Assembly (NCBI RefSeq): GCF_040938485.1
Contig: NW_027271913.1
Location: 1,302,001-1,366,000, forward strand
Direction: 5' to 3'
Source of the DNA: Diadema antillarum
Lineage: Eukaryota
DNA: 64,000 nucleotides
The number at the start of each line of letters is the position of its first letter. Position 1 is the stretch's first letter. This document shows, piece after piece, positions 22,549-61,720 of the stretch. The notes beneath the pieces are model-generated. The model saw only the letters and a program-made list of their open reading frames with translations, did not search any database and was not told where the DNA came from. Position numbers and translations under genes: made by a program.

Positions 22549-25500
22549 TCACATCTGCGAAGACTGGTGACCTAACAGCTGTTTGGTTCGTCGACTGATG
22601 CTAAAACAGTTCTCCAGGGCAGCAGCATCTCTTGGGTCAGATGGCTACCAAGTGAAAGATGAGAAGAGAAGGAAAAATCAGGAAGAGCAAGACTGATTTC
22701 AGTGCTGCAGAAACATCTGCACAGTGCAAACAAGTCCTAAATTTACATATCTTTGAACCTTCGAAATCAACTTCTCTTCATACAATTAAGTTTTGTAATC
22801 GCTTTGTTCAGTCTCTCTGTTCTGAGAAGTTCTTTCATTCGTCCTGCATCCAACATGCAGCAATTCAATCTCACTGGAGTCAATGCACTTTGCCAAAGCT
22901 GAATGTCAGGGACTGGTGAATTACCTTAACTTCAATAATCATACACTAATACATGATACAATTACCATACACTTTTTTATTTAGGTCTGAGAAGGATTTC
23001 AACTGAGGTAGACGACATTCAACATAAGTGACTTAGACTCACACATAGAAGTGACTGTAGTTACTTCAATAGGTCCAAATGGGCTGGACACAAGGAAAGT
23101 GGACTCTATCTTCAAGTCTTCAATGGACTTTAACACAGGCAACTGAACACCAAAATAGTGGCAGCTGAGCTTTGTGACCATCGTTACTTACCTTCCAAGA
23201 ATGTCTTTTTGTGGCTTCTGTCATCTCTTTGATTTCTGCTTTGACCTTGACAATGTTGCGCAGTGCTGGACGGACCGTAACACCATCTTGTTTGGGTAAA
23301 CTCCTACAAGAAGGAACAAATGCTGATTTGTGAAACATGTGTTTGCCTTTACAATGATGAATGCACATATTCAACTTCATTAAAGTTCATTTGAGAATAT
23401 CATCATGTTGAGTCATTTTCATTCATTGTTATTGTTTTGTCTGCTCTAAAATTGATCACCTCCTCCCTCCACCCCCCCCCCCCCCCCACTGGAAAAAAAA
23501 AATGGTTTGAAAATGCTTTTATGTGAATGGTCCCAAATTCCAAGTATGACAACAACAAATATGCTGGAAGAACAATTTATTATAAGAGTAATTATCATAC
23601 TAACCCTTTGACTAAACTGTTGCATTCCTTTCCCTATACAGTCAACCTCGGATACCTCGAACTCGGATAAGCCGAATATCGCTTACCTCGAAGGCAAAAT
23701 GAAAGTCCCGATTGTTCCTATGGAGTTTTCGTGTGTTAAAATTTGCGTAGCTCGAAAAAAACTAACTCGAAGTTCGGTTACCTCGAAGGGAAATCTCATG
23801 TCCCGATCTTAATTAACTTATTGTTTTTCCCAGCATGTTGCTCGAATTGAAATTGCAAACATCACTCAGCATTTCTGATGAAGCGCGCGTGGACAGCGAA
23901 GACATGTCACAAATCTTTTCACACTCGATTGTAAATATTCTTAGCCCCCAGAACGATCGTGCGCTCAAAGAAATACCCGGTACACAGCAGACAAGGAAAA
24001 TCCCCAACACCTACTGTACCTACACACGTACACGGTATGCGTATAGCAGCCGTGCAAATGGAGTGCTTACAATAGCACTACGCTCTGCCCATCATCTTTC
24101 TTTGACCACTCTGTTTTGATTTGCGATCGTGATACTAGTATACCATAGTCATGCCGTGCGCGTACATTTCTTAACCGTCGTGGCGCACTTGCTGAGGTGT
24201 TGACAGTTGTATCTTTGGCATTAATCACGGTCCACTGTCCAAACATCAGTCTCCCGCTAGTGTTTTTTTTTTTTACTTTTTTTCCTTTCACGAAGTTTGT
24301 TTCATTAATTCTCCGCCGAGAACGCAAGCTCTGAATATTCTTTTTTTCCAGCAATGCGATTATGAAAATAGTGTGGTACTAAGTAGTATATGATCTGAAA
24401 GTATAGGCCTAGCATAATAAAGAATAGTATAGATATGATTTAACAACAGTTTATTCTGATAAATTTCGAAGTAACGGAATAATATGCTTTACGATTTTCA
24501 GACAAAAAAAAAAAAAATCATCATGTATTTTACCCCTGTTTTGACTTGAATCTTTTTTGAGTTTTCGGTATTTTTTTTTTCTTTTCTTTTCTAGCACAAT
24601 CGTCAAGGCCCCCTAAGATTGTTTCGCTTTTTTTTTAATGCGAACAATCCTCTTCGGTAAATGTTTATGATTACAGTAATAGCACTGTCCTCAGAAGCCA
24701 TAGCCGGAATCTGATCTTGCAATATTACTCACTACTCAAGTAGCCCATCCTTCATGTACTGTGCTGCACTTATTCAGGGCTCGACACTTACAGTGGCCCG
24801 GGGCCACCAAAACGCACGTCGGGCCACCAAAAAAAGTTGGATGTTTGCCTTTACTTTTGGAGATAAACAGCGGTAACAATCGGCCCCGAAAGTTGCTGCA
24901 ATGAATGTCAGATGATTGCTTTTGATTTTGGAAATGAATAACAGTAATATTCGACTCCATATACGATACTAAAATAAATGTCGGATGTTTGCTTATACTT
25001 TTGGAAATGAATAACGGTAAGATTCAGCTCTGTACAGTGCTTAAATTAATGTCAGATATTTGATTTTGTGTTTGGAAATAAACAAGGATAACATTCGGCT
25101 CCGAAAGATACAAAAATAAATGTCGAACGATCCCTTAGACGTTCGGAAATGAATAACAATAGTATTCAACTCCGTATGACGTTTGCTTTTATATTTGAAA
25201 GTAAATAGCAATAACATTCGGCTCCAGAAGATGCTAAAATAAATTTCGAATGTTTGCTTTGACGTTTGGAAATAAATAATAATATTCAACTCCGTACGAT
25301 GATAATATGAATGCCTGATGTTTGCTTTTACGTTCGAAAGTACATAGCGATAACATTGAGCTCCGGAATAGGCTAAAATGAATGTCGAATGATCCCTTTT
25401 ACATTTGGAAATGAATAACAATAACAATCAACTCCGTACGATGATTAAATAAATGTCGGATGTTTGCTTTTACTTTCGAAAGTAAATAGCAAGAACATTC

Positions 25501-28500
25501 GGCTCCGGAAGATTCCAAAATAAATATCACAGTCATGATTGCTTTTACATTTGGAAGTGAATAGCAGTAACATTCTGCTCCATACGATGCTAAAATAAAT
25601 ATCGGATATTTGCTATTATACATTTCGAAATTAATAACACTAACATTCAGCTGCGTTTGATGGTAAAATAAATGTCTGATATCTGCCTTGACGCTCAACA
25701 ATGAAAAACAGTAACATTCAGCTCCATTCGACGATAAAAATTTGTCAGATAATTCATTTCACTTTTGGAAGTGGACAGCAGTAATATTGGGCTCCGTATG
25801 ATAGTAAAACGAATGTCGGATGTTTGCTTGGAAATTTAGAAATGAATAACAGTAATATTCTGCTCCGTATGATACTAAAATAAATAACTGATTGTTGCTT
25901 TTACATTTGGAAATGATTAACGGTATCGTCTGCTGACTGTGAGTGCTGCTGGTAGACACATGGAAGACCGGTGCGTAGCGGTGCGTAGCGGTGCGTAGTT
26001 GTGTGAAATTTTAATAGTTTGCAAAGCTAAGACTGTGATTCTTGTGTTGGATATTGTGTAAGAGATGATGACTTAGAGAGAGAAAAGGAGGAAAAACGAA
26101 TAGTGATCGAGGGGGTACCTACGCCGACGCGACAATGTACATTCAGCACGCATGTTCTGCAACCCTGTCTTGCACTCGATTACGTACCGGTATTTTCTTT
26201 TTGTTTTTATGGTGATAAGTCATTAAATTGTCCACCAGAAAACACTGATGAAAGAAGAACATCGATTTTCATTCAATTCATTCATATTAAAGTCGATTCA
26301 AATCCAACTGACAAGCATACAAACAATCGGTAGGCACTGTAACAGATACCATGTTGAACATCGACAAAAATCGGATAAGTCGAAGAAAATTCGACGTACG
26401 CGTACCTCGAAATTCGCGTACCTCGAACCAATTTCTTCAGTCCCGACGACTTCGAGGTATCCGAGGTTGACTGTAGTTTTGTCTTGTATTCCTCCACAAC
26501 AATTTAGATGAAAAGATTGCATTTCACTTATTTAATTAATTCTAATAATTCCAACCACACTAACAAAACATGTCTGCATCATCTTGGCTCCTTGGTATCA
26601 AGAGCTCCATGTCAACAGACGTCCACCTCATTGTACTCTGTAGATTCTTCCAGAATCAGAGCAAACTTTCAGTTTGATAAATCAGCACTTTACATTATCA
26701 TACTCTCTACTTTGCTTAGAGACCTCAACGACAAGATCTACACGCACTGTAGGTTTCTCAGACTCACTGGGCTGTAACAATGAGGTCAAGGGTAATTTTG
26801 GCCAGCTCCATCAGGGCCAGAGCCTCGTCCCTGGACACCTGGAACTCCCCTGACCCAAGCCAGGCTGTCATAGGAAAGAAGACCTCCAGGGAGGGCCACA
26901 TGGAGTCCCATAGGTCCACCACGCTGCCAACGATGTGGAAGTAGGTTGGTTTCCGTGGCAACTTGAGGACCTGGCAGTTAGACGAGGATGGCAGGGATCA
27001 TACAATGGAAGGAAAACATGAGGTGGGAATACTGTGATCACACAAACATCAGAGTATGGCATAAATATGATTATGACACAATTAATATTTCATCCTTAAT
27101 GTTATTCAATGAATGGCAACACTTGGGTCATTTCACGTTAAGTGTACACTTTTTTTCTCACGGGGGGTCAAAAATGAAAGTTGTTGTTCGGGGAAAAAAC
27201 ATACAGATTCTAAAACCTTAGGGTATATTCAATCTATATCTAAAATTAAAGAGCGTCAAGTCCATGTTTACATCTTTAAATAGTTTCCTAAAATATAGTC
27301 ACAAAAACAGGCGTCTGGAGAGGACATTTTGTTTAACAAGAAACACATCAGCTTTATCAAGCCTGTAACTGCTACAAAAATGGTTCTCTGTGTATTTATA
27401 TGTTTGTATCTGTATTACTGATCCAATGTCAATGTACTCATTTAAACTTCAGTCTAGCCATATTTTGCCACAAAACTGATGTATCATGTGGCAAACTGAG
27501 ATATGGAGGGGTAAATTGTATTTAGTGACATAAAAAAAATATAATTTTTCTTCGTATATAACTTCAAATTTGATGCACAGTGTTTTATTTAAGTCTAAAT
27601 TATTTGTTGTTGTGTATAATGATTAAGTAATTGCAAGAACCAATCAGCTGTGAGCTTATAAACCTTAGTATATTCAGGGGTGTTGGAGAGGGCAATTATT
27701 TAACAACAACCTCTACAATTATGAACACCAACTATATGAGCTAATATGTGAATTTATACGATGCATCAATCAGTTTTAACATTTCTGCATAACTGTACTC
27801 CAGATGTTATTGCAATGCTCAAGAGCCAAATCACATTAAAACAGTAAAAAACTTCAGAGTGGACACCCAAGTACAGCTCCAATTACTTATAAGAAAATAT
27901 TGCCTGAAAATTTTGAAGTTAACGCACAATAACACGTTTATTAAGCAATGTTTTACTATAAAAGGAATGCTGTTGTTGTTCATTGATACATCATTGTTAA
28001 TATTGTGGTCTTATTATCTACCCAATGGGAACTCTCAAAGAATGAATAACTGATAAGTTCTGGAGAGGACATTTTGTTTAACACTAAAATTTGGAAGCAA
28101 GATTGCTGAAAGACCATGAAACTTGTTTGATCTCTCTATGGTCTTTCAGTGCACTTCTCTGAGGTCTTTCACAATTCCTGATTGATCTGTCAGGGGTCTT
28201 TGTGGTCTCCAAAACTTCTTGAAATGGTTCAAAGCAGTCTTTTAGTAGTCATTCACGAAAATGGTCTGCTGGTGATCTGTCAGGGATCTCTCAATTAAAT
28301 TGCAAAGGTGTTATTATTGTCTCTCCATGATCTTGTGACAGTCTCTCTTTTCTTTTGTTTTTTTTTTGTTTTGTTGTTGAGATCATTGAAAGACTGCTGA
28401 GAGATCATTGAGAAATCATTGGAAGACCAGTGAAAGTCCATAGAAACCAGTGATAGACATGCATGGAGATTGCGAAAAGATCTTTTTTGAATCCAAGATC

Positions 28501-31500
28501 CCTTAAAGACTGTTTAAAGACTGTTGTAGGACTAGTGTAAGTTCCGCAAGACAACAAATATCATAAACATAACAGCACTGCAATATTCCGATTCATATTA
28601 CAGGGATTTGTTATCTTGTTCTTTCACAATTCTTGCAGTAGTCTCAGTCTTTCTATTAGAATTCTCTCTGTGGTCTGCGGCAGTGCTTTAGATATCTTGA
28701 TTGATCTTTCAAAGATCTCTGGCACTGTAAGAGATCTCTCAATAGTCTTATTGGTCTTGATAAACTTTTAGCTGTCTGCAAGATTGGAGCAGGGATCTTG
28801 CTGGAAAAGTTGTTTTTGGTCTTTTGATGGTCTTGCAGGGGTTTCAGGAACCACTCCAAAGAGACAGCAAATTTCACTGATCCTGAAGCATTACTGAAAC
28901 AGCTTGGCAATTTTCAGTCTTTCAGTGGTCTTTCAATGGTTTCCATTCTGTGGAACAGGGGCTAATGGTAGTCTTTACTTTCGATTTTCATGTAAAGTTA
29001 TTACTAGGCAAGACAAATCTGGCTTTGCTTTTTCTGCTGTTGTTTAAAACTCAGTCAATACATTTCAGAACTAATGCTGGTAGCATAGTTAGCATCCAAG
29101 AATATTAACCCATTGAAAACAAACATGAAACACTAGACTGGGTAGCCTGTAATAAGAGGTTATACTGATTAGAGTTCTCTGTCAAATCACAAATGAAAAA
29201 GACAAATTCGAAGCTGAGATTTTCAAATTTCACAAATGTAACAGAATGCTTTAAACCATTATGTACATGATATTGTGAATTAGAATGTTTCAAGTGATAT
29301 GACACTTTAAACAACAAATTTTGAATGACATACATGGCGTGCAATTGTTGGACCAAGAAATTCATGCCACGGGGAATCACCATGTACTTGCATAATTATA
29401 TATACCTGCACATAAAGGCCTTTAATAGAAAGGAAAGGAAATCAAACCGAAGGTGCAAAACAGGAAAGCATGGGTAGCAGGGGTAGCATGGGTAGCAGGG
29501 TAGCATGGAGGAGAGCCATCAAGGAAATACATACTGTCTCATCCTACAATAACACTGGTAGAAAATGGTCTTTAAATGATGAATACCCCATCAATTTGTT
29601 GCAAAACTCTCTTAAGGGAGCATACTTCTAAGTGGAGTACAGCATATTAAAAAAAAAAAATGAATAGGCCAACTTATTTTGTACACAACATGAAAATGGG
29701 GAGTGAAACAGTGATGTATAGTGTTCCGGATTCGATTACCTGCACAAAAACCATTTATCTCTTGATTAAAGTGACCAAATTGTAAATGCAATCATGTGTT
29801 AAAATATGTGTCCTCTCCAGAACAACATGAAGGCATGCAGTATATTGTTTTCCAGGCTAGTAAATAATTGCCATGATCAGTAGATTTTGTCAGTTACACA
29901 GTTACAAACAGTATCACATTAATTTTTCTTGACTATCAAAATATGGTGTGAGAGTATTGCCGCCACTGACTTCCGATATTGCTCAATTACATAGATGAAC
30001 TAATGAAAATCAATTCTAGAATAAAATTCTAGCAGTTGAAATGTTAGTTTATGATTTCTGTTACAGAATGCAACAACAGACCATTATTTTCTTACATAAA
30101 AGAAGGAGTTTTACTGTTAAAATTTTTGTTTCTGTACATTGTTAAAAGATGAACTACCTTTGTTCTGGAGAGGACATGCTGTTTAACGCTGCATTAATGT
30201 AAGATACTGACCATCTATAAGAATTTAGAAAGAAAATCATATTTCATCATGTTGAATTGAAGTACACAATTATTTCTATACCACAATAATAGATATCAAA
30301 ATCCTTAGTGCTTCAAAAAATGAAAAATGTACGTGTTCTGGAGAGGACACACTTTTAACGGAAAATTTGCATATCAAAATAACCAAGCAGTAAAATAAAT
30401 CCAACACATTATGTTCATTGATGTGTCATATATTTTCACTTACAAACATTCTGAAGATTAAATCAGCAGCATTTTGGCACATCTTTATCGCTTTCATTCA
30501 CTGCTAGTGACTTATATGTTCTGGAGAGGACACAATTTTTTTGTTTAACGGAAAAGATACCTTTTACAAAAACATTCATAAGTTCCACATTTATGGGTCA
30601 AATTTCATCAAATAAGCTTCAAAATGCTGAATAATGGTTGTACTTATATAATAAGAGGAATATTCAGTACAACTTTCATTCAATTCATTTAAGATATCAA
30701 TGAACTTTATCAAAAATGTCGAATGAGAATCCATTTTCCGTTAAAAATACACAAAAAATCCAAAATTTAGGAGAAATAATACTTGAACTGTCCTGAAATT
30801 GCAACTAGTAGGTTGGTGTTGATAAGGTCCATCAAACAATACCGCCAGTACAATAATGGAAATTCTAAAAATGGGCTAAAATAGGGAAAAATCAGTTTTT
30901 ACAAAAGTGTACACTTAATGTGAAATAGCCCACTTGTAAATTTAATACAAAGTTGAACTGAATATTCACATATCAGAAAGGTCAGCTGAAATTTTATCAG
31001 TTGTGGGTTGCTGAAAATTCTAAAACCCAACTCTCGATTCCTTTCCACCTTCTCTCCAGATATCATTTGATCATCAGAATTAATTCTTCACTTGTCATTC
31101 TGTCTATGATCTCCTCACACTTGCAACAAGTTTGTGTTAAATATGCACTCTTCGTGAGAGTCCATCACACAAGTACTATGGTTAAAGTCTTTAAGACATA
31201 CCTGAACAGGAAGAAGCAGAGGGGCTTCCACCGGGCTGACCCTCTGCCGCCAGAGTGAGATGTGAAATTCTTCCACCTGCTTCGGTGACTCGATATAGTG
31301 TGGGGAGAGGAACGCCACGACATGCCGAGCATTCTCCAGCTGATCTCGTCGCTCCTGTTCGGAGGCAGCATCGATCCTGACGACGACACGAGGTGCAGCG
31401 AGTTCCAGCATGCGCTGGAAGAAGACAGCGTACCTCCGGTCCTGTGGGTGGAAGCTCAGGATGACCTCACCCACCACACCCTTGTAAGTGGAGTTTTCAG

Positions 31501-34500: not shown

Positions 34501-37500
34501 TCACTCCTAGCTCTCCTGTCAATTTCAGTAACCTTATGCATTTTATTGTACTAGGTGTTTTCGAAGAAATTATTCAAGAACTGATAATCACACTGCTCTT
34601 CAGTATGGATGCCATTTTCATGTGGTGATCCATCATGGCAACATGTTTAACTTTCCCATGATATAAAGCTACTTTATGAAAAAGATTATACATGAAAATG
34701 TGTTACATCATTATCACTTACCCTTCAATGAAAGGCAAAATTAACTTACTGTTGCCTCTGAAAATGTGGCAGTGAGTTCATCTATGGGGTATTTGACCTC
34801 TTGACCATGCAGCCATTGAACCAGGCTGGTGCAAACTTTCTCCATCATCGTCTTGAAGATGTCTGGTGTGGCTGTTACCATGGGAACCTCAGAGAAAGAT
34901 GCTATCTCTGTCTCAAGCTCTTCAATTTGCACTGGGATGAGTCTTAGTTTATCCTGCAGTGGTGAGAACAGAATTACTGATTACATGAGGAAACAATACT
35001 TCATCCTGTTATTTCATCTACATGTATTTTAAAAATATTTGTCCATTCCTTATCAGAGAAAATTCTAAATCCCCTTCTATTCCTCCATAATATTGATTAT
35101 CACAAACCTTAAGCACAACATCAATCTATATTCATCCCTCCATCTTTCCACCTATCTTGCTCCATAGCTCTCTATAGCACCCATCTAGCTATTCATCTAT
35201 TTATTGTAGCACCCATCTATCTATCCAATCTATCCATCCATTTATCCATCTATCAATTTAGCTATCCTTGATCTCCGCATCTATCTACACTCATCCATCA
35301 ACCCATCTTATCTATCCATTTGTTCATCCATTCACTTATCCATACATACATCTTTTCCTCCAAGTATTTACCCATCTATCCATTCATAAATCCATCCAGC
35401 CATCCATCCGTTCATATATCCATTCATCTATCAATCCATTCATTTATCCATCCACACATCCTTTAATCCATCTATTCATCCACCCATCCACAAATCTTTC
35501 CATCTTTCTACTCATTAACTTATCCATGCACGGCTATAGATACACAAACCAACACATATACCCTAGTAGATGTGACATATACAAACAGACACACATAATA
35601 TATTGCATGAATATATCAGCTTATCTATGAGATCAACATTTCTATAACGCCTGAAGAAATCCTTGTCATTTGATTGGTTGTTTGACATTGATCATTCAGC
35701 CCATTTCTCAATGACGTCATCATCCGTGCAATTGTGGCTCCATTTACCGTGCAATTTTGGATCCATACGATTTGCTCCATTGCACGCTCGCTGAGAGCCC
35801 GGCACACTACGCATGTAAAACTAGTGTAAAGTTCTCAGTGAGCACTCTCGCGATCTCAGATTCTCTCCTAGTTACTAAATTATTTCCACCATCAAATGAC
35901 AAGGATCTATTACAGGCGTTATATAAAATAAATAATAAATGTTTTTATTCATGCAATGGACAGAATATTTCATGAGGTGAAAGATGAAATGTTTGATCCA
36001 TTCAACTCGGTTGCACCTTGTTTGAATGGATCATTTCATCTTTCACCTCATGAAATATTCTGTCCATTGCACAAATGAAACACATTTATTATTTGTTTTA
36101 TCCATTCGACTTGGCTGCACCCCGCTGAATGGATCATTTCATCTTTCACTTCATGAAATATTCTGTCCATTGAACTCATAAACATTCATTATTTGTATAC
36201 TATTCCATCCTCACTAATTTCTCCCCTGGACCAACCATGAATGTCGGAAACGCTTATGAAGCACTCACCTGACAGAGATGTTTAGTCTGTGCCAAGCTGT
36301 ACTCCTCCCGACACACCGCAGACCTCAGATAACGATTGGACAGCACAGCCAGCATTGACCTTGACCCATCGATGGAGTGGTACAGGGTCTGCTGCCAGGC
36401 ATGACCTAGAGACAAACACAGCAGAAATCAGATTCAGATTTTTATGACAGATTCATTCATTTCACAACTGACCAGAGTGATATTGACAAATTCTCCAAAG
36501 AAAGGGGAGGGAGAATAACAAAAAACAATTTTAGATAGCTGTGAGTACATCCAGCCCATAACAATTTTTTTTTTTATTTCACATTACTTTTAACTATTTT
36601 TATTTATTTGGTATCTTCGATTGTTCACAAGTCATAATGTATTAATAACACAATATCTTAATTAACGATATGTATAAAATCACATCTAAAATGATATGAG
36701 TACATTATGGGGACATCACAGTTACTTGACACATTTTTAGACTGGACATCATTCATTTACTTTGCAATGACTGACATCCTATGGCAAACTACACTTTTTA
36801 TGCATCACATGTTGATTGGTACATCTGGCTCTGTATGAAAGATGATTCTAAAATATGTTACGTGCCCATTCCTCATCCTGATCTAAGCCAAATTATAGTA
36901 CTCCAAGAACCCACTCAAATGTATCGCAGATTATTCATCAAAATTAATATGCATCTAAAGAAAATTCTACATCTGAAATGGGTAAATCCATCATTCTAAT
37001 CAAACATGTTTTGTGCATGCAGCAGCACACACTGGTCCTTTTTGGCTCTATAGTTCAGAGATGTGTTAACTCACCAGTCTTCAGTTCCTGAATGTCGTAG
37101 AATATCCTGAGGTTGGGGTCAAGCCCCTGGAGGGTGTCTACAATGTGCTTGGCTGCCTCCGAGTCAGCGTGACTGTAGGAGACGAAGACGTCGTAGCAGA
37201 ATGGGTCACCATCGGACTCGGCCTCGCCCTCACCATCATCAGTCACCATGACAGGCAAGGTCTTGATAAGCTGCTGACAGGTACTGGCTATCTTCTCAGA
37301 TGAATCATCTCTGTTGAGGTGATAATCAAACAGACAGAGAATGCTACTTACAAACTTCAAAGACCAAACCGTAAGCCCCACTGCATGGATCCATCAAATG
37401 CATATAGAGTAGTGTAGACAAGAACTTTTGTGTGCACTTTAATTTTCGGAATATCGGTTCTCCTGAAATTCACAAAATAAAATGCATACAAAAATTTCTG

Positions 37501-40500
37501 GTTTTACAGCATGTAGAAAAAGTCGAACCAGGCTAGATGGTAATTACAGGTGTTCGTGTTATTACTAGTGTTATTAATTACTGGTAAGAAACTGTATGCT
37601 AACCCATTTTGAAACAGTCTTTTAGATTTTTAGAAATATCTCCTTGTTTGTGTCAAACTATCCAAAACAAGAATCCCAATTAACAAGCCCCACCTCCAAA
37701 CAACTGGAGACCTCTGTCAATTCATCTTCACATCTGTTTTAAATCACAATAAATCTATTTGGAATACCAATGTTATATTCAAAGACATTGAGTGAGTTCA
37801 TTGATTAGGGCTTAAAACTCCAAGACATAATGACAATCACCTTTATGATCAAAAGGACAGAAGACAAACCAAGCCTGAATATGAAATGAATGAGAATCAA
37901 TACATTCACATTTTTACCACAACAAAAACTGCAATCTGATGTTAAAACATGGCCCTGACTGTATTCCAATGTTAACCATCACCTACATTTTACTCACCTG
38001 CAGTCAGCATACTGCACAAGACCCATGTAAGTGGGCAAGGTGACAGTTTCCACAAAGAACGGTGCCAAAATATCCCTCTGAGCTTGGCGGTTACAGCACA
38101 GGGCAATGTTATACTGCTCCAAACAGTCTGGTGACTCCAAGTAGTTTGGACTCAACACTGTGACAGAAGACACAATTCTTTATGCATATTTCACTTATTT
38201 TGTGAAACACAGAGAACCCCTGTGTACCACATTTATATGAGAATTGATTGTATGGACAGAGAACTCACATAATTTTGAGGAACTGAGCTTTTGTCGGTAC
38301 TTCTTTGTGTGAAAGGAATTGTGAACAGTTCTCTGCTCAATAGTTCACCATATGACTTTCCTCTAAGCCCAACCTGGCCAATAAAATTCATCTAACTGTA
38401 CATATTTCAATACAAGTTTTGATGAATCATTTTGCTAAAACCTAGTTAATGAATAAATCAATTCTAATCTCTAGAGATAGAGGATATCTACAGCTGTAAG
38501 TCTGGGGGCTAATTTCATGAGGATTTTTGAAGCCATTTCAACTGATATATTATGAATTATATACAGTACCTCTATCTTCAAGCAACTTAGAGTTAGCGAC
38601 TGAATGGTTGTTTTCTAACTGTTGCCATAGTAACTGAAATCACTGATATGTACACTGACTGCAACCCCCCTTAACCTATTGAGGACGAATCCTGAGTATA
38701 CTCGGGCAAGTGTCTATGGGAAATGCCTGTTGTAGCAAAATCAGCCTGTCCTCAACGGGCTAAATATCTGGCCGCGTGGTGAATTTTACATCTATATAAT
38801 AAGACTACAACTGACCAGTGATGACCCGCGCACACCTGGTCATAACAGTGTAGATGTCCTGCTGCCAAATAGCGTCTCCGTCCACCTTCTGCTGCGAGGC
38901 GTAGATTCGTACGTCAGGCTTGAGCTGCTGTAGAGTGGCCTGGATGTCGTCGACTACCTTCTGGTCTTTGTTGCTGTACGACAGGTAGACATCGAAGTCC
39001 AGTTTGACTTCCTGTGGGAGAGAAACAATGAGAAACCCCTCGTCGTAACATCACTCTAATAACAACAAAAGCACTTATTCTCCTTTTCCTCTGGAGTAGA
39101 AGAAAGTCAAATGAGGATCACAGATGATAAAATGTCAATTTATGTTATATGCTTCCTTTCTGTTGACAGGAAGACTTGCATTGAGATACTTTATCACACA
39201 TTGTATCATTCATATTGCTACATACAATAAAACATTGTAAAAGTGTGATGAATTAGGTGACTTTATGTTCAACAAAGCACACATTTGTCAAAAACATTAC
39301 AGTAATGGCAGGTATCACTTTCATTCAATTTGTTTATGACGTTGTGTCTGATTAATTTGATAAATATGATTCACATGTCTGGGCAAAAGCAGACAGAAGT
39401 GACAATAATTCCATTCTGTATTATTGGCTGCAAAGTAAAGATTTGAAGAAGGTGCACAGGGTTGGTTGGTTTGTTTGTTTGTTGTTGTTGTTGTTGTTTC
39501 CCTTCACCTGCACAACAGCTATGAATGCATATAATCAACTCAGCACCATTGTAGTTCAGTGGTTACACACCAGTGCAGTGCAGAGCAGCTTGAAATCTTG
39601 TTTAATAATATCATATAGAATGGAAGGCATATCCACTGGTATGGAGATACCTTTTTAGACTCTTTATGGGACATTGAAATGACATAATTTATTGCACACC
39701 TTGCAGGGAATGAGTTATATTACCATGACACACTACCTTTGTGATGGAGAGTTTGGTCTCGAACCTTTCCTTGAGATCGGAGAAGAGCTTGAGGATGTCA
39801 TCATCGTTTGGTCTCTGGAGGATCATTGCTGCCTGCGTCTTGCTGAGGACCTTGGCATAGATGACAATCTTGAGGAGGCGGAGAGGAAGGCCGGCCTTCA
39901 TCCAGCTCACGGCGTTCTCCACCATCCCTTTTAGCATCTCACACTCATCACATCCCTGGGGTTATTCAAGGCAGTTAAGTTCACATCAAGTACTGTAAAG
40001 TCAAGTTGTATTCTTAGAACAAATGTACAATTGACTGTTATGGTAAAAAGATATTTTTCTCAACTCCAGGAGAAAGTTGTCTATTCCTGTCTATGACTCT
40101 TTATCCCAACAGCTTTCTTTACCATCTCTTTAAGCATTTTGCCTTCATCATATTCCTAATGTCATTTCAGCAGCAGATTCTACATGAAAGATAAGTCTAG
40201 CCTCCTGCCAGAGCTAAAGCTCCAAAAACTATTAATATTTTGTGGTGGTCCTTTTTGATCCAATATTCAAAGGCACGAGCAATGCACTTCATCCTATGAT
40301 TTCAATTACCTTATTCTTGATCCTTAGTAAACAAGACAGGACAAGACAAGAGTACTGCCCATAGAGAAGGCATCATATCTACACACAACAGTATCAGGCC
40401 ATTTATCAGTAATTTTCAATCTATCGTAACAATTTCTGTCATCTTCCAACTTTTTGCAGAGCTTCCCCAGTTTTCACTGAAAAATAAATCTTCATGGTAA

Positions 40501-42902
40501 TAGAGTATTTCCTTCAAGATTAGAATACTGCAAGAGTGGAAATGTTGAGGCAATTGTTTTTATTTTCTGTATAATTATTATACTGAAATATTTCCCAAAT
40601 TTAATAGCCCTAATTTACAGTGTGCAAAATTTGTAACAATTTTCACAATATGCATCATTTACAGTAGAATGAAACTCAGACACTAAATGACCATATCCCC
40701 TTAAACTAAAACATATCACAAACATCAAATTTGATCTGTTAAGCGAAGTCAATGTCCCACCTGGCTCCCAGCATTCAATAGTGGTGTGATGATCGAGCCG
40801 TCCTGGTTGTTTAGGATGGGGACAAGGCAACGGAAGGCGTGGGAAACCAACTCCTGGGGGCGCCCTCTTGCCCCTCTACTTGGGTCATAGTACCTTGACA
40901 ATCAAAATGAGAAGTTAGTCATGACTTGTCAATTGCTTCAGAGATTGTATCAAAAGTGTGATGTAATTCGATATAGTAAAGTTTACTGGACATATTGTTA
41001 ACATATGAATGTACAAACATGTACACATATAAATATATAGAAAATAATACAGATTAATCACCTTCCTCTCAGAAGATTCCCTACAAGAGCACAACACTTT
41101 TTTTCATTGGTATAACTATAGTCCTTGATAATCATGAGATAAGCACATAAGAAAATCTAAAGGACAGGTCGGGGTGTGGCATTTCATCAAGTGTTTTGTC
41201 AGTGATTTTCAGTGACGAATTTGCTCTTAGCAAATCAGATGTGAGGATTTCAGCTAAAAACAGTTGTAAGTGACTGACAAGTTTCATGAAATGCTGTTCT
41301 GATGTTGGATTGCGACTATAACCGCTTGTTTCATTGCTCCCAGCATCACCCTTTTATATTAGACCAGCACATTTCATCTTTACACCTGTGATACATTACA
41401 ACAATAAAAACACAAAACTTATTGTCTATGCTTCTGTACACTCGTTCTTTGCAATACACATACCCCCTTACAAACATACACACACATACACATTCTCACA
41501 CTACTTTACAACACTTTGAATAATGAGGGTGATTACCACAGACTGCACTTCACAAGGCAAACATACATAACCTTGGTATTGACTCTGTGCAAAATAACAA
41601 ACAATGTACAAGGAACACTTACAGTAAATAACCAGGAGACATCAAATCAATTCTCAAAAGAGTCTAGGAAATACTGTATATGCCGAATATTTTGCGAATT
41701 TCGTGAGTCAGGTGCTATTCGCAAAATAACAGACACGCGAAAATAATGACTCTGATCCCAATATGAATGAGACTTACACATAACAATTTCTCTGTTCAGT
41801 AAATTACTCCACAATCGCAAATTAAACCACTTGCAAAATCGTCGAGAAGTCCCGATTCACGGAAAATATGGCATATACAGTAGTTTACAAAATAAGATTT
41901 ATCAAAAACAAACAAAACAAAACAAAAAACAAGAAGACATTCTGGCAAACACGTCACACTTTTTTCCAGAAAATTCTCCCCCTCTGCTCTCAAAGCAAAG
42001 CAATCTATGATAAGGCAGGTGGTCAGGGAGAGGCTTGGTCCACCAGCAGGAATACAGGGCACGAAGATCCTCCTCTTGGTGGCTCCTTTTCAGCTCAGCC
42101 ACATCAATCTCAAGATTCTTATAGAGGGCGCCCATCACACCTATGCCTTTGCTGTAGCTTCCTACAAAGCAGAGAGAGAAATAAATTCCCAACAATTCTC
42201 CTTTGGACTAAGAGCACCTGTTGAATATGTCCTGATAAAGATATTGACAAGATTTGTCGATGACATGTCAGACTTTCCAGTCCTGACCACCTGAAATGTT
42301 TTAAAATATTACAAGCAAGTTTAATGCAAATACATGAAAAAACTTACCCCGAGTTGCATGTCAAGATTACAATAAAAGAATATCCTTTTGTGATAAAATG
42401 TATTTCAATAAAACTTGCTAGAAAAATGTATCAGATACTAAATAATGGCAGAGAATCATCACATGTTTACAGTGTATTGGGAAGAAATGTAGCAAAACAA
42501 ACAAAATTGCATGAAAATACTTAAAACAGAGTACAAAAAACAACAAACAAGCAAACAAACATACCATTTCCCTGGTATAGTTTTGCTTTGTAAAAAAATT
42601 AAAAAAAAAATTTGTTTTAAATATGGAGAGGCTCCATCTGCCCTTGGGATTAGTTAATCTTTTACGGATTCTACATGATAGGAAAAAACAAATTACAAAA
42701 CAACCTTACCTCCAAAGGCTGATACCAGGATGACATCTACTTTGTCTGAGTTAGGAAGCTTGGTGATATCTCCGAGGCAGAGCTCAATCCGACAGTCTCC
42801 TCCAGGTGTCCGCACGCACAAGGTGTCCTTTACAAGGAGGCCTGGAACTGGACCGTCCCCATCACTGGACCCCTCAGGACAATCGGTCAGGGTCGAACTC
42901 AT
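22549..42902 (-). CDS. Macro-like domain + three TIR domains, cytosolic, ~840 aa; coding exons 42710-42902, 41960-42161, 40761-40893, 39737-39955, 38816-39011, 37998-38157, 37075-37310, 36269-36405, 34750-34953, 31202-31633, 26768-26970, 23192-23303, 22549-22644
   Basis: Thirteen GT-AG exons join in frame (2523 nt). The N-terminus has Macro-like motifs [26 protein letters not shown] and [16 protein letters not shown]1: [11 protein letters not shown]...[18 protein letters not shown]2: [11 protein letters not shown]...[18 protein letters not shown]3: VILSFHPQD...[16 protein letters not shown]. No signal peptide or TM helix was seen. The least certain parts are the gtgtga donor at 41959 and the last exon. 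Confidence 0.88.
23639..26473. mobile_element. Non-autonomous pogo/Tigger-like (Tc1/mariner superfamily) DNA transposon, 2835 bp
   Basis: Perfect 23-bp TIR CAGTCAACCTCGGATACCTCGAA with TA on both sides and repeated subterminal TACCTCGAA motifs. No transposase ORF. Confidence 0.88.
24838..25925. repeat. Degenerate tandem array, ~70-bp unit x ~16, inside the pogo-like element
   Basis: Recurrent unit close to TTTGGAAATGAATAACAGTAATATTCRRCTCCGTACGATGCTAAAATAAATGTCGGATGTTTGCTTTTAC. Confidence 0.85.
27125..30931. mobile_element. Non-autonomous TIR element, Sola2-like (3.8 kb)
   Basis: Imperfect TIR GGG(TC/CT)ATTTCAC(G/A)TTAAGTGTACACTTTT with a 4-bp TSD ACTT (27121-27124, 30932-30935). GGG termini plus a 4-bp TSD fit Sola2; the superfamily call is an inference. 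Confidence 0.7.
31733..32290. mobile_element. Kolobok-like fold-back MITE (558 bp, long TIRs)
   Basis: TTAA|AGGG...CCCT|TTAA with about 200 bp of imperfect inverted repeat at the two ends. Confidence 0.8.
32458..34216 (+). mobile_element. Helentron-associated non-autonomous element (HINE/Tsp/pearl-like)
   Basis: 5' AAACTAGAAAT with subTIR TATGCCTCCG (32487-32496), TGACCTT-rich core, (GACG)n microsatellite, and a 3' hairpin ATGCCTCCG..CGGAGGCAT followed by an A-run. Confidence 0.75.
35185..35530. repeat. Degenerate (TCCA/TCTA)n low-complexity tract
   Basis: Direct reading; a similar tract lies at ~48170-48600. Confidence 0.85.
35643..36200. repeat. Composite fold-back interspersed repeat
   Basis: Inverted pair 35643-35674 / 35891-35923, a ~50-bp-arm hairpin 35952-36004 / 36022-36071, and a duplicated arm at ~36127-36172. 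Confidence 0.75.
38675..38759. mobile_element. piggyBac-like miniature element, second copy
   Basis: TTAA|CCTATTGAGGAC...GTCCTCAACGGG|CTAA; closely similar to 52585-52669. Confidence 0.7.
41672..41882. mobile_element. TACTGTA...TACAGTA MITE family copy (opposite orientation to the 20218 copy)
   Basis: TIR TACTGTATATGCC; the interior resembles the reverse complement of 20218-20440. Confidence 0.75.
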
Positions 42903-57150: not shown

Positions 57151-58167
57151 TTACCTATGTTTACAGGACTGAATCTTGTCCCTTCCTAGAGGTTGTCCCA
57201 GAACTGCTTGTCCAAAAGATGTTGCCTGGGATGCCGGTTTCAGGTAAAAATTCCTGAACGTGGATTCATTTTTCCACCCAGCATGCTTGAGAATGTCTGC
57301 TATTGGAAAATGATTCCTCTTGGCAGATGAGGTTGCCGCCGATCTCGTTGAATGTGCTTTGAAGAGATCGGTGTCGATACCTGATGCTCTCAACACAGTT
57401 TTTATCCATCGAGCGATGGTTTGCTTTGATGCCTTCCCATGGGGTTGCTTGTAGGTGACAAATAGTGCATTCACCTCCTTCCTCAATGTGCTTGTTCTGT
57501 TAATGTATTCTTTAACATAGTGTACAACACAGAGTTTCTTATCCTCGGGAAAGGCTTTCAGTGTTACTTTCACTCCCACATTCCCAGGTTGACTCTGCTT
57601 TATCAAATCAGCCACTGCTATTTCCACACAATCTTTGGACGCCTTCACATTGTTAAGGGTTAGGTATGAAAGTGTTTGCACTCTTTGGGCAGAAGTCAAC
57701 GCTAGTAAAAAACATACTTTGTGTGTCAGTTGACACAGCGAAATCTTATGAGCTGGAGTTACTTGTCTGAGGTAGCTCAGCACCTTGCCCACATCCCATA
57801 TGAAGCTGTATCTCGGAGTGGGTGGTCGGAGATTAAAAATGCCCCTGAAGTACCGGCAAATCCAAGGATGTGTAGAAATGGTGTATTTCTCGTCCCGTAG
57901 AAGAACAACTGATGCTAGTGCGCTCCTTGATGTATTCAAGGTGCTGTAGCTTGCTCCATTTTTGTACATAGAATTAAAAAACGCAAACAAATTTCCCACC
58001 TTCGTATGGGTCCAACATAAGTGACGCTCATGACAAAACCTTTGCCACTTCCTAATATACACCATATACTGCTCCTTGGTGGATTTCCTCCAAGACGCTG
58101 CCATTATATCAGCAGTCTCCTCCGTCAGTCCTTGAGCTATGAAATGTTTGCTCCAACCCTGCAACAT
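57151..58167 (-). CDS. DIRS ORF3: tyrosine recombinase with N-terminal SAM-like integrase domain
   Basis: Catalytic motifs AQR (R), KAHSTR (HxxR), AGW and RNFY (Y). N-terminal SWRKST..QY..Y..KW..FC is also present. Confidence 0.95.
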   Translation of the reverse strand: MLQGWSKHFIAQGLTEETADIMAASWRKSTKEQYMVYIRKWQRFCHERHLCWTHTKVGNLFAFFNSMYKNGASYSTLNTSRSALASVVLLRDEKYTISTHPWICRYFRGIFNLRPPTPRYSFIWDVGKVLSYLRQVTPAHKISLCQLTHKVCFLLALTSAQRVQTLSYLTLNNVKASKDCVEIAVADLIKQSQPGNVGVKVTLKAFPEDKKLCVVHYVKEYINRTSTLRKEVNALFVTYKQPHGKASKQTIARWIKTVLRASGIDTDLFKAHSTRSAATSSAKRNHFPIADILKHAGWKNESTFRNFYLKPASQATSFGQAVLGQPLGRDKIQSCKHR

Positions 58168-61414: not shown

Positions 61415-61720
61415 GCTGAGAACGATAATCACGCTTGTAAGAGAGCACGAATTCAGTTCCGTATTTCCGCAGATTTCGATGATATTTTCCGATTTTTCGG
61501 TCAGATAAAAATCGCTTCGCGATCGAACATTGCGCTGGAACGAAGATGGCGATTGCGCGCGGAACGGCCTCTCATATTACGCAAATTCAGCCAATGGCTA
61601 ATGCGCAGCCAATGGCTGAATTCTCTACCGTACATTACGAGATAAAATACATGTGTAACTATACACGTCATCTGATCTCTGGTCAGGCTAGATAACAAGC
61701 AGTCGCAAAATACACAGCAG

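What the first reader, a model, noticed from the sequence alone, without database searches (positions are those of the whole stretch)
22549..42902. Single-chain Macro + 3xTIR protein: a possible animal counterpart of type II Thoeris (TIR signal maker plus Macro ADPR sensor)
Seen: after splicing, the N-terminal ~215 aa show the Macro-fold motif order: IELCLGDIT (GDIT), [17 protein letters not shown] (GGGV.GAI-like loop), [13 protein letters not shown] (SIA.P.I.TG..G loop) and a terminal helix-strand LKIVIY. Three TIR domains follow, with no TM helix, LRR or death domain. Established: TIR domains can be NADases that make ADPR-derived signals (SARM1, plant TIRs, Thoeris ThsB), and in type II Thoeris a Macro-domain ThsA binds the TIR-made ADPR conjugate. 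Inference: this cytosolic protein may make and read (or be auto-regulated by) an ADPR-type messenger in invertebrate innate immunity. Multi-TIR invertebrate proteins are known, but the Macro-like N-terminus is easily missed because it is split over four exons.
Basis: partly seen in the sequence, partly recalled or inferred. Interest (0 to 1): 0.85.

Follow-up and report, generated by a model that had tools for sequence, protein, structure and literature searches.

The report
Macrodomain plus triple-TIR immune-type gene
This sea-urchin gene encodes a protein with an unannotated ADP-ribose-binding-type (macro) domain followed by three TIR domains; it belongs to an old, unnamed animal family whose macro-TIR unit also exists as a single small protein in many bacteria, which suggests a bacterial-type nucleotide-sensing immune module kept in marine invertebrates.

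Summary
On the minus strand, 42902 to 22549, lies an intact 13-exon gene. All introns are GT-AG and the product is 840 aa, 95% identical to an 'uncharacterized protein' of Diadema setosum.

New here:
- About 340-aa bacterial proteins (51 species, more than 10 phyla, no conserved neighbour gene) carry the same macro domain plus one TIR.
- HMMs built from the bacterial proteins alone hit the urchin Macro, TIR1 and TIR2 at E 1e-35 to 1e-42.
- The animal family spans cnidarians, echinoderms, hemichordates and spiralians, and its tree follows the species tree.
- The catalytic Glu is invariant in bacteria and in TIR2, mostly kept in TIR3, and replaced by Gln in TIR1.
- Most family members end in a CaaX box; this gene does not.

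The Thoeris type II analogy is only partly supported: the domain is not the ThsA-type Macro, there is no TM segment, and there is no two-gene system. My best reading is a single-chain sensor-effector in which an ADPR-type ligand gates a TIR NADase or signal maker. That mechanism is inferred, not shown. I found no paper describing the architecture.

The parts
42710..42902 (-). Coding exon 1 (aa 1-64 plus 1 nt). Start ATG at 42902. Holds GDIT (D45) and VSAF (S61) of the macrodomain.
41960..42161 (-). Coding exon 2 (aa 65-131). Macrodomain remodelled loop 1 (GIGVMGAL), the DLR..CWW hairpin and LLCFE (C120, E122).
40761..40893 (-). Coding exon 3 (aa 132-176). Helix and strand leading into diphosphate-binding loop 2 ([10 protein letters not shown]).
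39737..39955 (-). Coding exon 4 (aa 177-249). End of loop 2, helix, last strand LKIVIY (Y209 aligns with the tyrosine of Af1521's IY motif, which I recall as the adenine-stacking residue), C-terminal helix and linker.
39836..42839 (-). Macro-like domain, aa 22-216 (spans exons 1-4 with their introns).
   Evidence: A bacterial-only HMM hits aa 22-216 at E 1e-42. AF2 model and fold matches. Profile against PDB.
38816..39011 (-). Coding exon 5 (aa 250-314). N-terminal half of TIR1 (FDVYLSY).
37998..38157 (-). Coding exon 6 (aa 315-367). C-terminal half of TIR1. Gln329 (38116-38114) sits at the catalytic-Glu position. Holds the LPTYM..YADCR motif shared with the bacterial proteins.
37075..37310 (-). 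Coding exon 7 (aa 368-446). Linker and N-terminal half of TIR2 (YDVFVSY).
36269..36405 (-). Coding exon 8 (aa 447-492). TIR2 core with G..WQQ and SAVCREEY. Catalytic-position Glu481 is at 36304-36302.
34750..34953 (-). Coding exon 9 (aa 493-560). C-terminal part of TIR2 and linker.
31202..31633 (-). Coding exon 10 (aa 561-704). Linker and most of TIR3. Catalytic-position Glu682 is at 31270-31268.
26768..26970 (-). Coding exon 11 (aa 705-771). End of TIR3 and a conserved helical segment.
23192..23303 (-). Coding exon 12 (aa 772-809).
22549..22644 (-). Coding exon 13 (aa 810-840 plus stop at 22551-22549). The tail lacks the CaaX box found in most family members.

Best explanation
Shown: the locus is an intact 13-exon sea-urchin gene for an 840-aa protein with no TM helix. 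The protein is a divergent macrodomain (aa 22-216) followed by three TIR domains (aa 252-388, 404-542 and about 614-770). It belongs to an unnamed animal family present in cnidarians, echinoderms, hemichordates, molluscs, annelids, nemerteans and brachiopods, with a structural match in a placozoan. The Macro-TIR unit is homologous over both domains to a roughly 340-aa single-chain Macro-TIR protein scattered through many bacterial phyla as a stand-alone gene. Inferred: the protein works as a self-contained sensor-effector, by analogy with TIR-STING, TIR-SAVED, ThsA and SARM1. The macrodomain keeps the adenine-binding Asp (GDIT), diphosphate loop 2 and the terminal aromatic residue. It has lost the NAAN asparagines and the Gly-rich loop 1 that MacroD-type hydrolases use. 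It is therefore more likely a binder of an ADP-ribose-type nucleotide, with an altered distal-ribose side, than a hydrolase. Ligand binding would control assembly or activity of the TIR array. TIR2 keeps every residue that is invariant in the bacterial TIR, including the catalytic Glu (E481), and would be the unit that cleaves NAD+ or makes a signal. TIR1 (Glu replaced by Gln329) would be a non-catalytic partner. TIR3 is divergent but mostly keeps the Glu. The likely setting is innate immunity or regulated cell death. The confidence given (0.5) is for the whole statement including the inferred mechanism; the shown part (gene model, macro fold, three TIRs, bacterial homology) I hold at about 0.95.
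For: Gene model and identity. Macro fold; the bacterial full-length model (pLDDT 90.5, pTM 0.79) matches macrodomains at its N-terminus and TIRs (MAL, AbTir, Hydra TRR-2) at its C-terminus. Sequence-level link to Macro: with 43 PDB hits that are nearly all named macrodomain-containing proteins; GD aligns with GD, the PllatGnqG segment aligns with PAISTGVYG, and the IVxY tyrosine aligns with the Af1521 IY tyrosine. Bacterial homologues: the A1 profile finds about 40 proteins of around 340 aa with the same domain plus TIR at E 1e-33 to 1e-51; their alignment shows shared motifs in both domains; 51 loci in species-representative genomes of more than 10 phyla; no conserved neighbour gene (contexts). 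HMMs built only from bacterial sequences hit the window protein at Macro 1e-42, TIR1 6e-42, TIR2 2e-35 and TIR3 1.5e-10, and hit all 68 animal proteins scanned. The same macro subtype is fused to other effector-type domains, as expected of a sensor module: DUF4145 and an ADP-ribosyltransferase (AFDB hit). Catalytic-Glu column: bacteria E in 30/30, TIR2 E in 38/38, TIR3 E in 34/38, TIR1 Q in 27/38. The column aligns with the WCxxE glutamate of TLR2. Vertical descent in animals: the animal clade has 100/100 support, cnidarians are sister to bilaterians, and the phyla are recovered. T1, T2 and T3 are each monophyletic. Background: ThsA macro domains bind ADPR, IAD and His-ADPR and oligomerise (PMC11204291; bioRxiv 10.64898/2025.12.03.692087). 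Many animal TIRs make cADPR in a manner that depends on the catalytic Glu (bioRxiv 10.64898/2026.04.20.719644).
Against: No ligand-binding or enzymatic data exist for any member. Loop 1 of the macro pocket is remodelled, so ADPR-type binding is not assured. Invariant Cys/Glu (LLCFE) and Asp/Arg/Trp residues of unknown role could mean a different chemistry. A Glu at the catalytic position is necessary but not sufficient: the TLR2 TIR has it and is inactive. The closest solved sequences to TIR2 are scaffolding TIRs (TLR15, TLR2, MAL, MyD88). The bacterial genes show no consistent defence-island context, and no bacterial member has been tested against phage. What would produce the ligand is unknown.
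Confidence: 0.5

Rival explanations
1. Scaffold or adaptor reading. The three TIRs are non-enzymatic interaction modules that plug into the very large sea-urchin TLR/IL-1R-type signalling network. The macrodomain is a reader that recruits the adaptor to mono- or poly-ADP-ribosylated proteins, for example PARP products made during infection or stress. This would be ADP-ribosylation-dependent adaptor recruitment, with no NAD+ cleavage by this protein.
For: The best solved sequence matches of TIR2 are TLR15, TLR2, MAL and MyD88. The closest structural relatives of the macrodomain are the non-catalytic readers macroH2A1.1, PARP9 macro 2 and PARP14 macro 2/3. The macrodomain hydrolase residues are absent. 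TIR1 has lost the catalytic Glu. Cytosolic multi-TIR invertebrate proteins (ecTIR-DC) have been proposed as adaptors (PMC6321704).
Against: The whole Macro-TIR unit is shared with bacteria, which have no TLR pathway, at E 1e-35 to 1e-42. The catalytic Glu is invariant in 30/30 bacterial TIRs and 38/38 animal TIR2 domains, which is hard to explain for a pure scaffold. Many non-TLR animal TIRs are now reported to be enzymes.
Confidence: 0.22
2. Enzymatic macrodomain reading. The N-terminal domain is a hydrolase that uses family-specific residues (invariant Cys120/Glu122, Asp96, Arg98). It would degrade or convert the TIR product, or remove ADP-ribose from a target. Under this reading it acts as a built-in off-switch or antidote, like DarG to DarT, or as a second step in making the final signal.
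For: C103/E105, D79, W87 and S44 (P0001:18-250 numbering) are invariant or nearly so across bacteria and animals. Macro-plus-NAD-using-enzyme pairs such as SirTM and DarTG are known toxin/antidote or writer/eraser pairs (my knowledge; PMC9503650). The same macro subtype is fused to an ADP-ribosyltransferase in an AFDB cluster.
Against: The MacroD-type catalytic asparagines and the Gly-rich loop are missing. The nearest structures are non-catalytic macrodomains.
Confidence: 0.15
3. Strict type II Thoeris analogue. The TIRs make a histidine-ADPR-type conjugate on infection, and the protein's own macrodomain reads it in cis or in trans, driving a feed-forward assembly.
For: Both required domain types are present. 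ThsA macro domains bind ADPR, IAD and His-ADPR and oligomerise on binding. Protein-language-model neighbours include a few ThsA_Macro clusters at a lead-only score of 0.80.
Against: There is no HMM or PDB-profile link to ThsA_Macro. There is no TM effector part. The bacterial homologues are single genes, not thsA/thsB pairs. A sensor that only reads its own enzyme's product needs a separate trigger, and none is evident.
Confidence: 0.08

Closest known systems
Type II Thoeris (ThsB TIR plus ThsA TM-Macro)
   Same: A TIR and a macrodomain act in one NAD/ADPR-centred system. The macrodomain has a non-hydrolase-type pocket. The closest structural neighbours reported for EcThsA Macro (OiMacroD, PARP14 macro 2, macroH2A1.1, Af1521) are the same as those found here.
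   Different: Here both domains are on one chain. There is no TM effector and no PF20016 or PADLOC ThsA match. No ThsA structure appears among the hits. The bacterial relatives have no partner gene.
Bacterial and oyster TIR-STING; bacterial TIR-SAVED (single-chain nucleotide sensor fused to a TIR NADase)
   Same: A ligand-binding sensor domain is fused to TIR in one polypeptide. The fusion is shared between bacteria and marine invertebrates, and invertebrate versions have duplicated TIRs (my knowledge of the oyster TIR-TIR-STING proteins).
   Different: The sensor here is a macrodomain, pointing to an ADPR-type ligand rather than a cyclic oligonucleotide. The sensor is N-terminal. No upstream signal synthase is known.
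SARM1 (ARM-SAM-TIR NADase)
   Same: An animal intracellular TIR protein with bacterial-like TIR affinities, in which a non-TIR domain binds NAD-related metabolites to gate the NADase (my knowledge; notes the bacterial affinity of the SARM1 TIR).
   Different: The regulatory domain differs (macro instead of ARM). There is no SAM octamerisation domain. There are three TIRs instead of one. The family was not found in vertebrates in my searches.
macroH2A1.1, PARP9 macro 2 and PARP14 macro 2/3 (non-catalytic macrodomains); Af1521 and YmdB (MacroD type)
   Different: 10-20% identity. The NAAN and GGG motifs of loop 1 are replaced by VSAF...Y...IGAL. The family has its own invariants (DLR, CW, LCFE). 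Scores are below Pfam Macro thresholds.
Evolutionarily conserved cytosolic TIR proteins of invertebrates (ecTIR-DC families, Gerdol et al. 2017)
   Same: A cytosolic, multi-TIR, invertebrate-wide family absent from vertebrates. The Trichoplax relative (B3S091) is probably among the placozoan ecTIR-DC proteins.
   Different: I could not read the defining paper, so I could not establish which ecTIR-DC family this is, or whether its N-terminal domain was recognised there. Public records name these proteins only 'uncharacterized' or 'TIR domain-containing'.
Bacterial fusions of a canonical Pfam Macro (PF01661) to TIR or to the TIR-like DUF4062
   Same: Same domain combination in bacteria (ESM Atlas clusters).
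   Different: Those carry a canonical macrodomain that Pfam recognises. The family here is a separate, divergent macro subtype. None of these fusions turned up as characterised in the literature I could search.

Membership tests
Macrodomain superfamily | Three-layer alpha/beta/alpha macro fold | tested here: met
Macrodomain superfamily | Detectable sequence homology to known macrodomains | tested here: met
   Profile A3 against PDB: PARP14 6.9e-6, YmdB 2e-5, Af1521 2.1e-5. There are 43 hits and nearly all are named macrodomain-containing proteins. The Pfam Macro gathering score is not reached by any single sequence.
Macrodomain superfamily | Adenine-contacting Asp after strand 2 (GDIT) | tested here: met
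   G27 and D28 are invariant in 41 sequences. They align to the GDIT of YmdB and Af1521. This is D45 in the window protein.
Macrodomain superfamily | Diphosphate-binding loop 2 (P-x-x-S/T-x-G-x-Y/F-G) | tested here: met
   PLLATGxQG aligns to PAISTGVYG. P152 and G157 are at least 90% conserved. The aromatic residue is replaced by Gln in animals and is variable in bacteria.
MacroD-type ADP-ribosyl hydrolases | NAAN asparagines and Gly-rich loop 1 (GGGV) used for distal-ribose binding and catalysis | tested here: not met
   The aligned segment reads V-V-S-A-F, followed by P.DY......IGAL. There is no Asn and no Gly run.
ThsA Macro of type II Thoeris (PF20016) | Match to ThsA_Macro models or to solved ThsA Macro | tested here: not met
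   No PF20016 hit at E up to 10 in 26 members. No PADLOC ThsA hit. No ThsA chain among the 43 PDB profile hits or the top 50 structural hits. There are only lead-level embedding neighbours.
ThsA Macro of type II Thoeris (PF20016) | N-terminal TM helices, and an adjacent thsB TIR gene in bacteria | tested here: not met
   No TM segment. The bacterial homologues carry the TIR in the same chain and have no conserved neighbour in 51 loci.
TIR domain | Pfam TIR/TIR_2 above the gathering score | tested here: met
   Exon pieces hit TIR_2. The ortholog P0001 scores TIR_2 at 156.6 bits in 3 stretches. The window protein has three hits with the bacterial TIR HMM.
Enzymatic (NADase or signal-making) TIRs | Catalytic Glu in the alpha-C motif (W/C-x-x-E) | tested here: met
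   TIR2 E481 (38/38 animals) and TIR3 E682 (34/38) carry it; bacterial homologues do so in 30/30. TIR1 has Q329 (Q in 27/38), so TIR1 fails this feature.
Enzymatic (NADase or signal-making) TIRs | Measured NAD+ cleavage or cADPR-type product | not testable with these tools
   This needs biochemistry. Presence of the Glu is not sufficient, since the TLR2 TIR has it and is inactive.
Bacterial stand-alone Macro-TIR family (unnamed, defined here) | Divergent macro domain with the GD[LI]T, VSAF..Y, DLR, CW and LCFE motifs, followed by a TIR with the F.SY, G..WQ, S..C..E and DCRE motifs | tested here: met
   HMMs built from 30 bacterial sequences only hit the window protein at Macro 1e-42 and TIR1 6e-42 (hmm positions 3-135 of 142). 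TIR1 keeps DCR and TIR2 keeps G..WQ and the Glu. The animal form differs by having three TIRs.

The most novel reading that the evidence does not exclude
Macro-TIR is a bacterial single-gene sensor-effector immune module that animals already had before the cnidarian-bilaterian split. It has been kept, with a triplicated TIR and usually a prenyl membrane anchor, in most marine invertebrate phyla. It acts as a receptor for an ADP-ribose-derived ligand and answers by TIR-catalysed NAD+ cleavage or cADPR-type signalling. That would be another bacteria-to-animal nucleotide immune pathway alongside cGLR-STING, with a ligand class (ADPR derivatives) not yet known to be sensed in animal immunity.
Probability: 0.33. 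Interest if true: 0.87.

Novelty: new variant of a known kind. Interest (0 to 1): 0.74.

Why it matters
TIR enzymes and the nucleotide signals they make are a current link between bacterial anti-phage defence and plant and animal immunity. In animals only a few sensor-TIR combinations are understood (SARM1, invertebrate TIR-STING). This gene shows that a macrodomain, the classic ADP-ribose reader, is fused to TIRs in an old family that is conserved across animal phyla and carries no functional annotation. It also shows that the same two-domain unit exists as a compact single gene in many bacteria. That gives a testable candidate for ADPR-type ligand sensing in animal innate immunity. It also gives a tractable bacterial model (about 340 aa) for working out the mechanism, and a built-in contrast between TIRs that kept the catalytic Glu (TIR2, TIR3) and one that lost it (TIR1). 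The family appears in none of the vertebrate or arthropod hits I obtained, which would help explain why it has been overlooked.

Tried and rejected
- Pfam on the single exon translations found the TIRs but nothing for exons 1-4.
- Pfam on full-length orthologs and on 26 isolated N-terminal domains also found no family. There was one sub-threshold Macro hit at E 0.3.
- PADLOC found no model for the N-terminal domain.
- An animal-only profile (A1) against PDB gave only E about 0.8 to PARP14. The link became significant only after bacterial members were added.
- I looked for a conserved partner gene next to the bacterial homologues by all-against-all clustering of ORFs within 5 kb in 51 loci. The only recurrent clusters were the gene itself, ORFs overlapping it, and synteny among closely related Accumulibacter genomes. 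I therefore rejected a two-gene system.
- Five bacterial contexts read with Pfam are heterogeneous. One has other TIR and nuclease genes nearby, and one has AAA_14/DUF4143 and HNH genes. The others look like housekeeping regions. No defence-island claim is made.
- I rejected bacterial contamination as the origin of the animal gene. It has 12 GT-AG introns, and the family tree follows the animal phylogeny.
- The direction of transfer between bacteria and animals could not be resolved. The animal clade sits in a polytomy with the bacterial sequences, and the node joining T1, T2 and T3 against bacteria has support of only 48/7.
- Literature searches for Macro-TIR terms and for TIR + macro domain + invertebrates + NADase found nothing.
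- The paper defining the ecTIR-DC families is not held.
- The AF2 tools return no coordinates or PAE. I therefore could not map the invariant residues onto the cleft or read the Macro-TIR interface.
Full report
**Anatomy of the gene**

Stop-to-stop reading of the minus strand between 43 kb and 22 kb shows a series of protein-like pieces. A phmmer search of 1.84 billion representative proteins, using the 66-aa exon-2 piece as query, returned 67 proteins. The best is a 841-aa protein, P0001, at 95% identity. One source names it 'uncharacterized protein [Diadema setosum]'.

Aligning P0001 back to the window with tblastn placed 13 coding exons. A script confirmed that all 12 introns have GT-AG ends. 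The joined exons give one 840-aa open frame from the ATG at 42902 to the stop at 22551-22549, and the product is 95% identical to P0001 over its whole length.

No 19-residue stretch is hydrophobic enough for a TM helix (maximum mean 1.44). Pfam finds only TIR and TIR_2.

**The N-terminal domain is a macrodomain**

Sequence libraries do not see this domain. There was no Pfam hit on the exon pieces, on ten full-length relatives or on 26 isolated N-terminal domains, apart from one sub-threshold Macro hit at E 0.3. PADLOC also found nothing.

Structure does see it:
- An AF2 model of aa 18-250, built with a 26-sequence family alignment (A1), has pLDDT 87.6 and pTM 0.88.
- All top 50 Foldseek hits in the PDB are macrodomains or macro-carrier fusions: macroH2A1, Af1521, YmdB, MacroD2. 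The best E is 3e-8 at probability 1.0.

After I added bacterial relatives to the profile (A3, 41 sequences), plain hmmsearch against PDB sequences also became significant. PARP14 scored 6.9e-6, YmdB 2e-5 and Af1521 2.1e-5. There were 43 hits, and nearly all are named macrodomain-containing proteins.

The printed alignments show what is kept and what is changed.
- Kept: the GD of GDIT (invariant G27/D28 in A3; D45 in the window protein). From my own knowledge, this is the adenine-N6 contact.
- Kept: loop 2, where PLLATGxQG aligns with PAISTGVYG.
- Kept: the aromatic residue in the last strand. IVxY aligns with the IY tyrosine of Af1521, which I recall as Y176, the adenine-stacking residue.
- Changed: the NAAN segment reads V-S-A-F, and the Gly-rich loop 1 is replaced by P.DY......IGAL.
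- Added: the family has its own invariant residues in DLR, CW and LCFE.

So this is a real but divergent macrodomain. It lacks the MacroD-type catalytic residues, and its nearest structures are the non-catalytic reader class.

**The three TIRs are not equivalent**

I used an HMM built from the TIR half of the bacterial relatives (described below) to cut out and align the three TIRs of 38 animal proteins.

| Column | Bacteria | TIR1 | TIR2 | TIR3 |
|---|---|---|---|---|
| Catalytic Glu (S..C..E) | E in 30/30 | Q in 27/38, E in only 3 | E in 38/38 | E in 34/38 |
| Window residue | n/a | Q329 | E481 | E682 |

This column aligns with the WCxxE glutamate of TLR2. From my knowledge it corresponds to the catalytic Glu of plant TIRs.

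TIR2 also keeps F.SY and G..WQ, which are invariant in bacteria. TIR1 instead keeps the C-terminal LP.YM...Y.DCR motif of the bacterial proteins. TIR3 has lost the G..W region.

On a tree, T1, T2 and T3 are each monophyletic (support 96/96, 100/99 and 100/98). The triplication therefore predates the split of deuterostomes and spiralians sampled in that tree.

A Glu at this position is necessary for TIR catalysis but not sufficient. A 2026 preprint reports Glu-dependent cADPR production by many animal TIRs, including an echinoderm one. It also notes that the TLR2 TIR has the Glu and is inactive (10.64898/2026.04.20.719644).

**A bacterial single-chain counterpart**

Searching the 5.8-billion-protein collection with profile A1, restricted to proteins of 128-408 aa, returned about 40 proteins of roughly 340 aa from metagenomes and MAGs. 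They carry the same N-terminal domain (28-44% identity, E 1e-33 to 1e-51) followed by one Pfam TIR.

Their alignment (A2) shows the family motifs in both halves. Several TIR motifs also occur in the urchin TIR1 and TIR2.

HMMs built only from these bacterial sequences hit the window protein strongly:
- Macro: 1e-42
- TIR1: 6e-42
- TIR2: 2e-35
- TIR3: 1.5e-10

They also hit all 68 animal proteins scanned, with the same domain order.

A pattern scan of one genome per GTDB species found 51 loci. They include Anaerolineae, Acidobacteriota, Actinomycetota, Gemmatimonadota, Alpha-, Beta-, Gamma- and Deltaproteobacteria, a planctomycete, Verrucomicrobiota, Bacteroidales and a clostridial MAG. Isolates among them include Thauera sinica, Methyloceanibacter and Primorskyibacter.

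Clustering all neighbouring ORFs found no gene that travels with it. Five contexts read with Pfam are clearly bacterial and heterogeneous.

An AF2 model of one full-length bacterial protein has pLDDT 90.5 and pTM 0.79. Its N-terminus matches macrodomains and its C-terminus matches TIRs, including AbTir and MAL. No solved chain among the top 50 hits covers both halves as a Macro-TIR protein.

The same macro subtype is also fused to DUF4145 instead of TIR. In one AFDB cluster it is fused to an ADP-ribosyltransferase. Canonical Pfam-Macro fusions to TIR and to the TIR-like DUF4062 exist as separate bacterial clusters. A constant N-terminal domain with swapped C-terminal effector-type domains is the usual signature of a sensor module in conflict systems. 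That is an inference.

**Distribution and descent in animals**

Named hits come from the following groups:
- All five echinoderm classes.
- Three hemichordates.
- Lingula.
- Two nemerteans.
- Two annelids.
- Gastropods, bivalves and Octopus.
- The cnidarians Nematostella and Rhopilema, plus a Porites fragment.

The best AFDB cluster hit is a 1015-aa TIR protein, accession B3S091, which I recall as a Trichoplax entry (E 5.5e-20, TM 0.76). No vertebrate or arthropod protein appeared. The searches are word-filtered, so that absence is not proof.

Several members sit on 2.4-3.2 kb contigs that are barely longer than their coding sequence. These are most simply read as transcript assemblies, which would mean the Macro and TIR parts are on one mRNA.

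A maximum-likelihood tree of the macro domain puts all 23 animal sequences in one clade (100/100). Cnidarians are sister to bilaterians (98/94). Echinoderms, hemichordates, spiralians and molluscs are each recovered. The window sequence sits next to the Diadema protein (an earlier version is).

That pattern indicates vertical descent since before the cnidarian-bilaterian split. The animal clade joins the bacterial sequences in an unresolved polytomy, so the direction and date of any transfer are not shown.

**How it most likely works**

Shown: the fold, the motifs, the domain order, the bacterial homology and the pattern of the catalytic Glu. Everything else in this section is inferred.

The comparison cases are:
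- ThsA macro domains, which bind ADPR, IAD and His-ADPR and oligomerise on binding (PMC11204291).
- TIR-STING and TIR-SAVED, from my knowledge.
- SARM1.

By analogy with these, the macrodomain would bind an ADP-ribose-type nucleotide whose distal part differs from plain ADPR. Binding would switch the TIR array on. TIR2 would be the catalytic unit and TIR1 a non-catalytic partner.

Three rivals remain open:
- A pure adaptor role, with the macrodomain reading ADP-ribosylated proteins.
- A hydrolytic macrodomain that uses the family-specific Cys/Glu.

I could not map the invariant residues onto the pocket, because the structure tools return no coordinates.

**Comparison with what is known, and novelty**

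The type II Thoeris comparison holds at the level of domain types only. The domain is not a ThsA_Macro member, there is no TM effector part, and the bacterial relatives are not thsA/thsB pairs.

The closest working analogy is the single-chain sensor-TIR class shared by bacteria and invertebrates (TIR-STING). The closest structural relatives of the macrodomain are the macroH2A/PARP9/PARP14 readers.

The proteins are probably among the 'evolutionarily conserved' cytosolic TIR proteins (ecTIR-DC) of invertebrates. I could not read the defining paper.

Public records call them 'uncharacterized' or 'TIR domain-containing'. Full-text searches for Macro-TIR terms found nothing. Three recent TIR surveys that I checked do not mention a macro fusion of this kind.

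I rate this a new variant of a known kind. The gene models are already public, but the domain, the bacterial counterpart and the asymmetry among the three TIRs appear not to have been described. The earlier notes of this scan on this window concern a DIRS retroelement elsewhere and do not touch this gene.

Noticed in passing
window 22549-22644 (last exon); family members P0070-P0200: 32 of 54 full-length family members end in a CaaX box (Cys at position -4), usually after a basic/Ser-rich stretch. They include echinoderms, hemichordates, molluscs, nemerteans, Lingula and Nematostella, which points to prenyl membrane anchoring as the ancestral state. The window gene and its orthologs lack it. 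The Diadema setosum and Lytechinus orthologs instead have a Cys-rich CCCIIC/CTCIVC patch about 20 residues from the end, which in the window copy reads CFSIS.
   Followed up: partly
window exons 5-8 (39011-36269); P0004, P0069, P0073: Annotated 'isoform X2' proteins of paralogs in S. purpuratus and Lytechinus join the N-terminal half of TIR1 directly to the C-terminal half of TIR2 (hmm positions 3-62, then 43-135). That makes a hybrid TIR which regains the catalytic Glu. In the window gene the same skip of exons 6 and 7 would keep the reading frame, because the introns after exon 5 and before exon 8 are both phase 1.
   Followed up: partly
window 24840-25925: A 71-bp (also 142-bp and 262-bp) minisatellite of about 10-15 copies, 69-77% matching, lies in the intron between exons 11 and 12. 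Smaller repeats lie at 35370-35490 (period 28) and 35990-36196 (period 103, two copies).
   Followed up: no
window 57151-61432, minus strand: Three long ORFs carry a tyrosine recombinase (Phage_integrase, E 1.6e-11), a reverse transcriptase (RVT_1, E 6e-23) and an upstream 449-aa ORF without a Pfam hit. This is a DIRS-type retroelement, already noted by this scan.
   Followed up: no
P0175, P0176, P0179 (bacterial, about 345 aa); AFDB A0A365XW13: The same divergent macro subtype occurs in bacteria with DUF4145 in place of the TIR. It also occurs in an AFDB cluster named NAD(+)-protein-arginine ADP-ribosyltransferase. So the C-terminal effector-type domain can be swapped.
   Followed up: partly
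contig of P0133 (ENA ERZ25039591, no DNA fetched): One bacterial Macro-TIR gene lies next to a TIR_2 + Endonuclease_NS gene and within 5 kb of another 321-aa TIR gene, together with WD40 and TPR genes. This looks like a possible conflict-system neighbourhood and was not seen at the other loci.
   Followed up: no
L057/L058 6880-8004: In an actinomycete MAG a 374-aa ORF with no Pfam hit overlaps the start of the Macro-TIR gene by 4 bases, which looks operon-like. It is flanked by AAA_14/DUF4143, DUF7662/DUF6884 and HNH genes. This arrangement does not recur in other loci.
   Followed up: no
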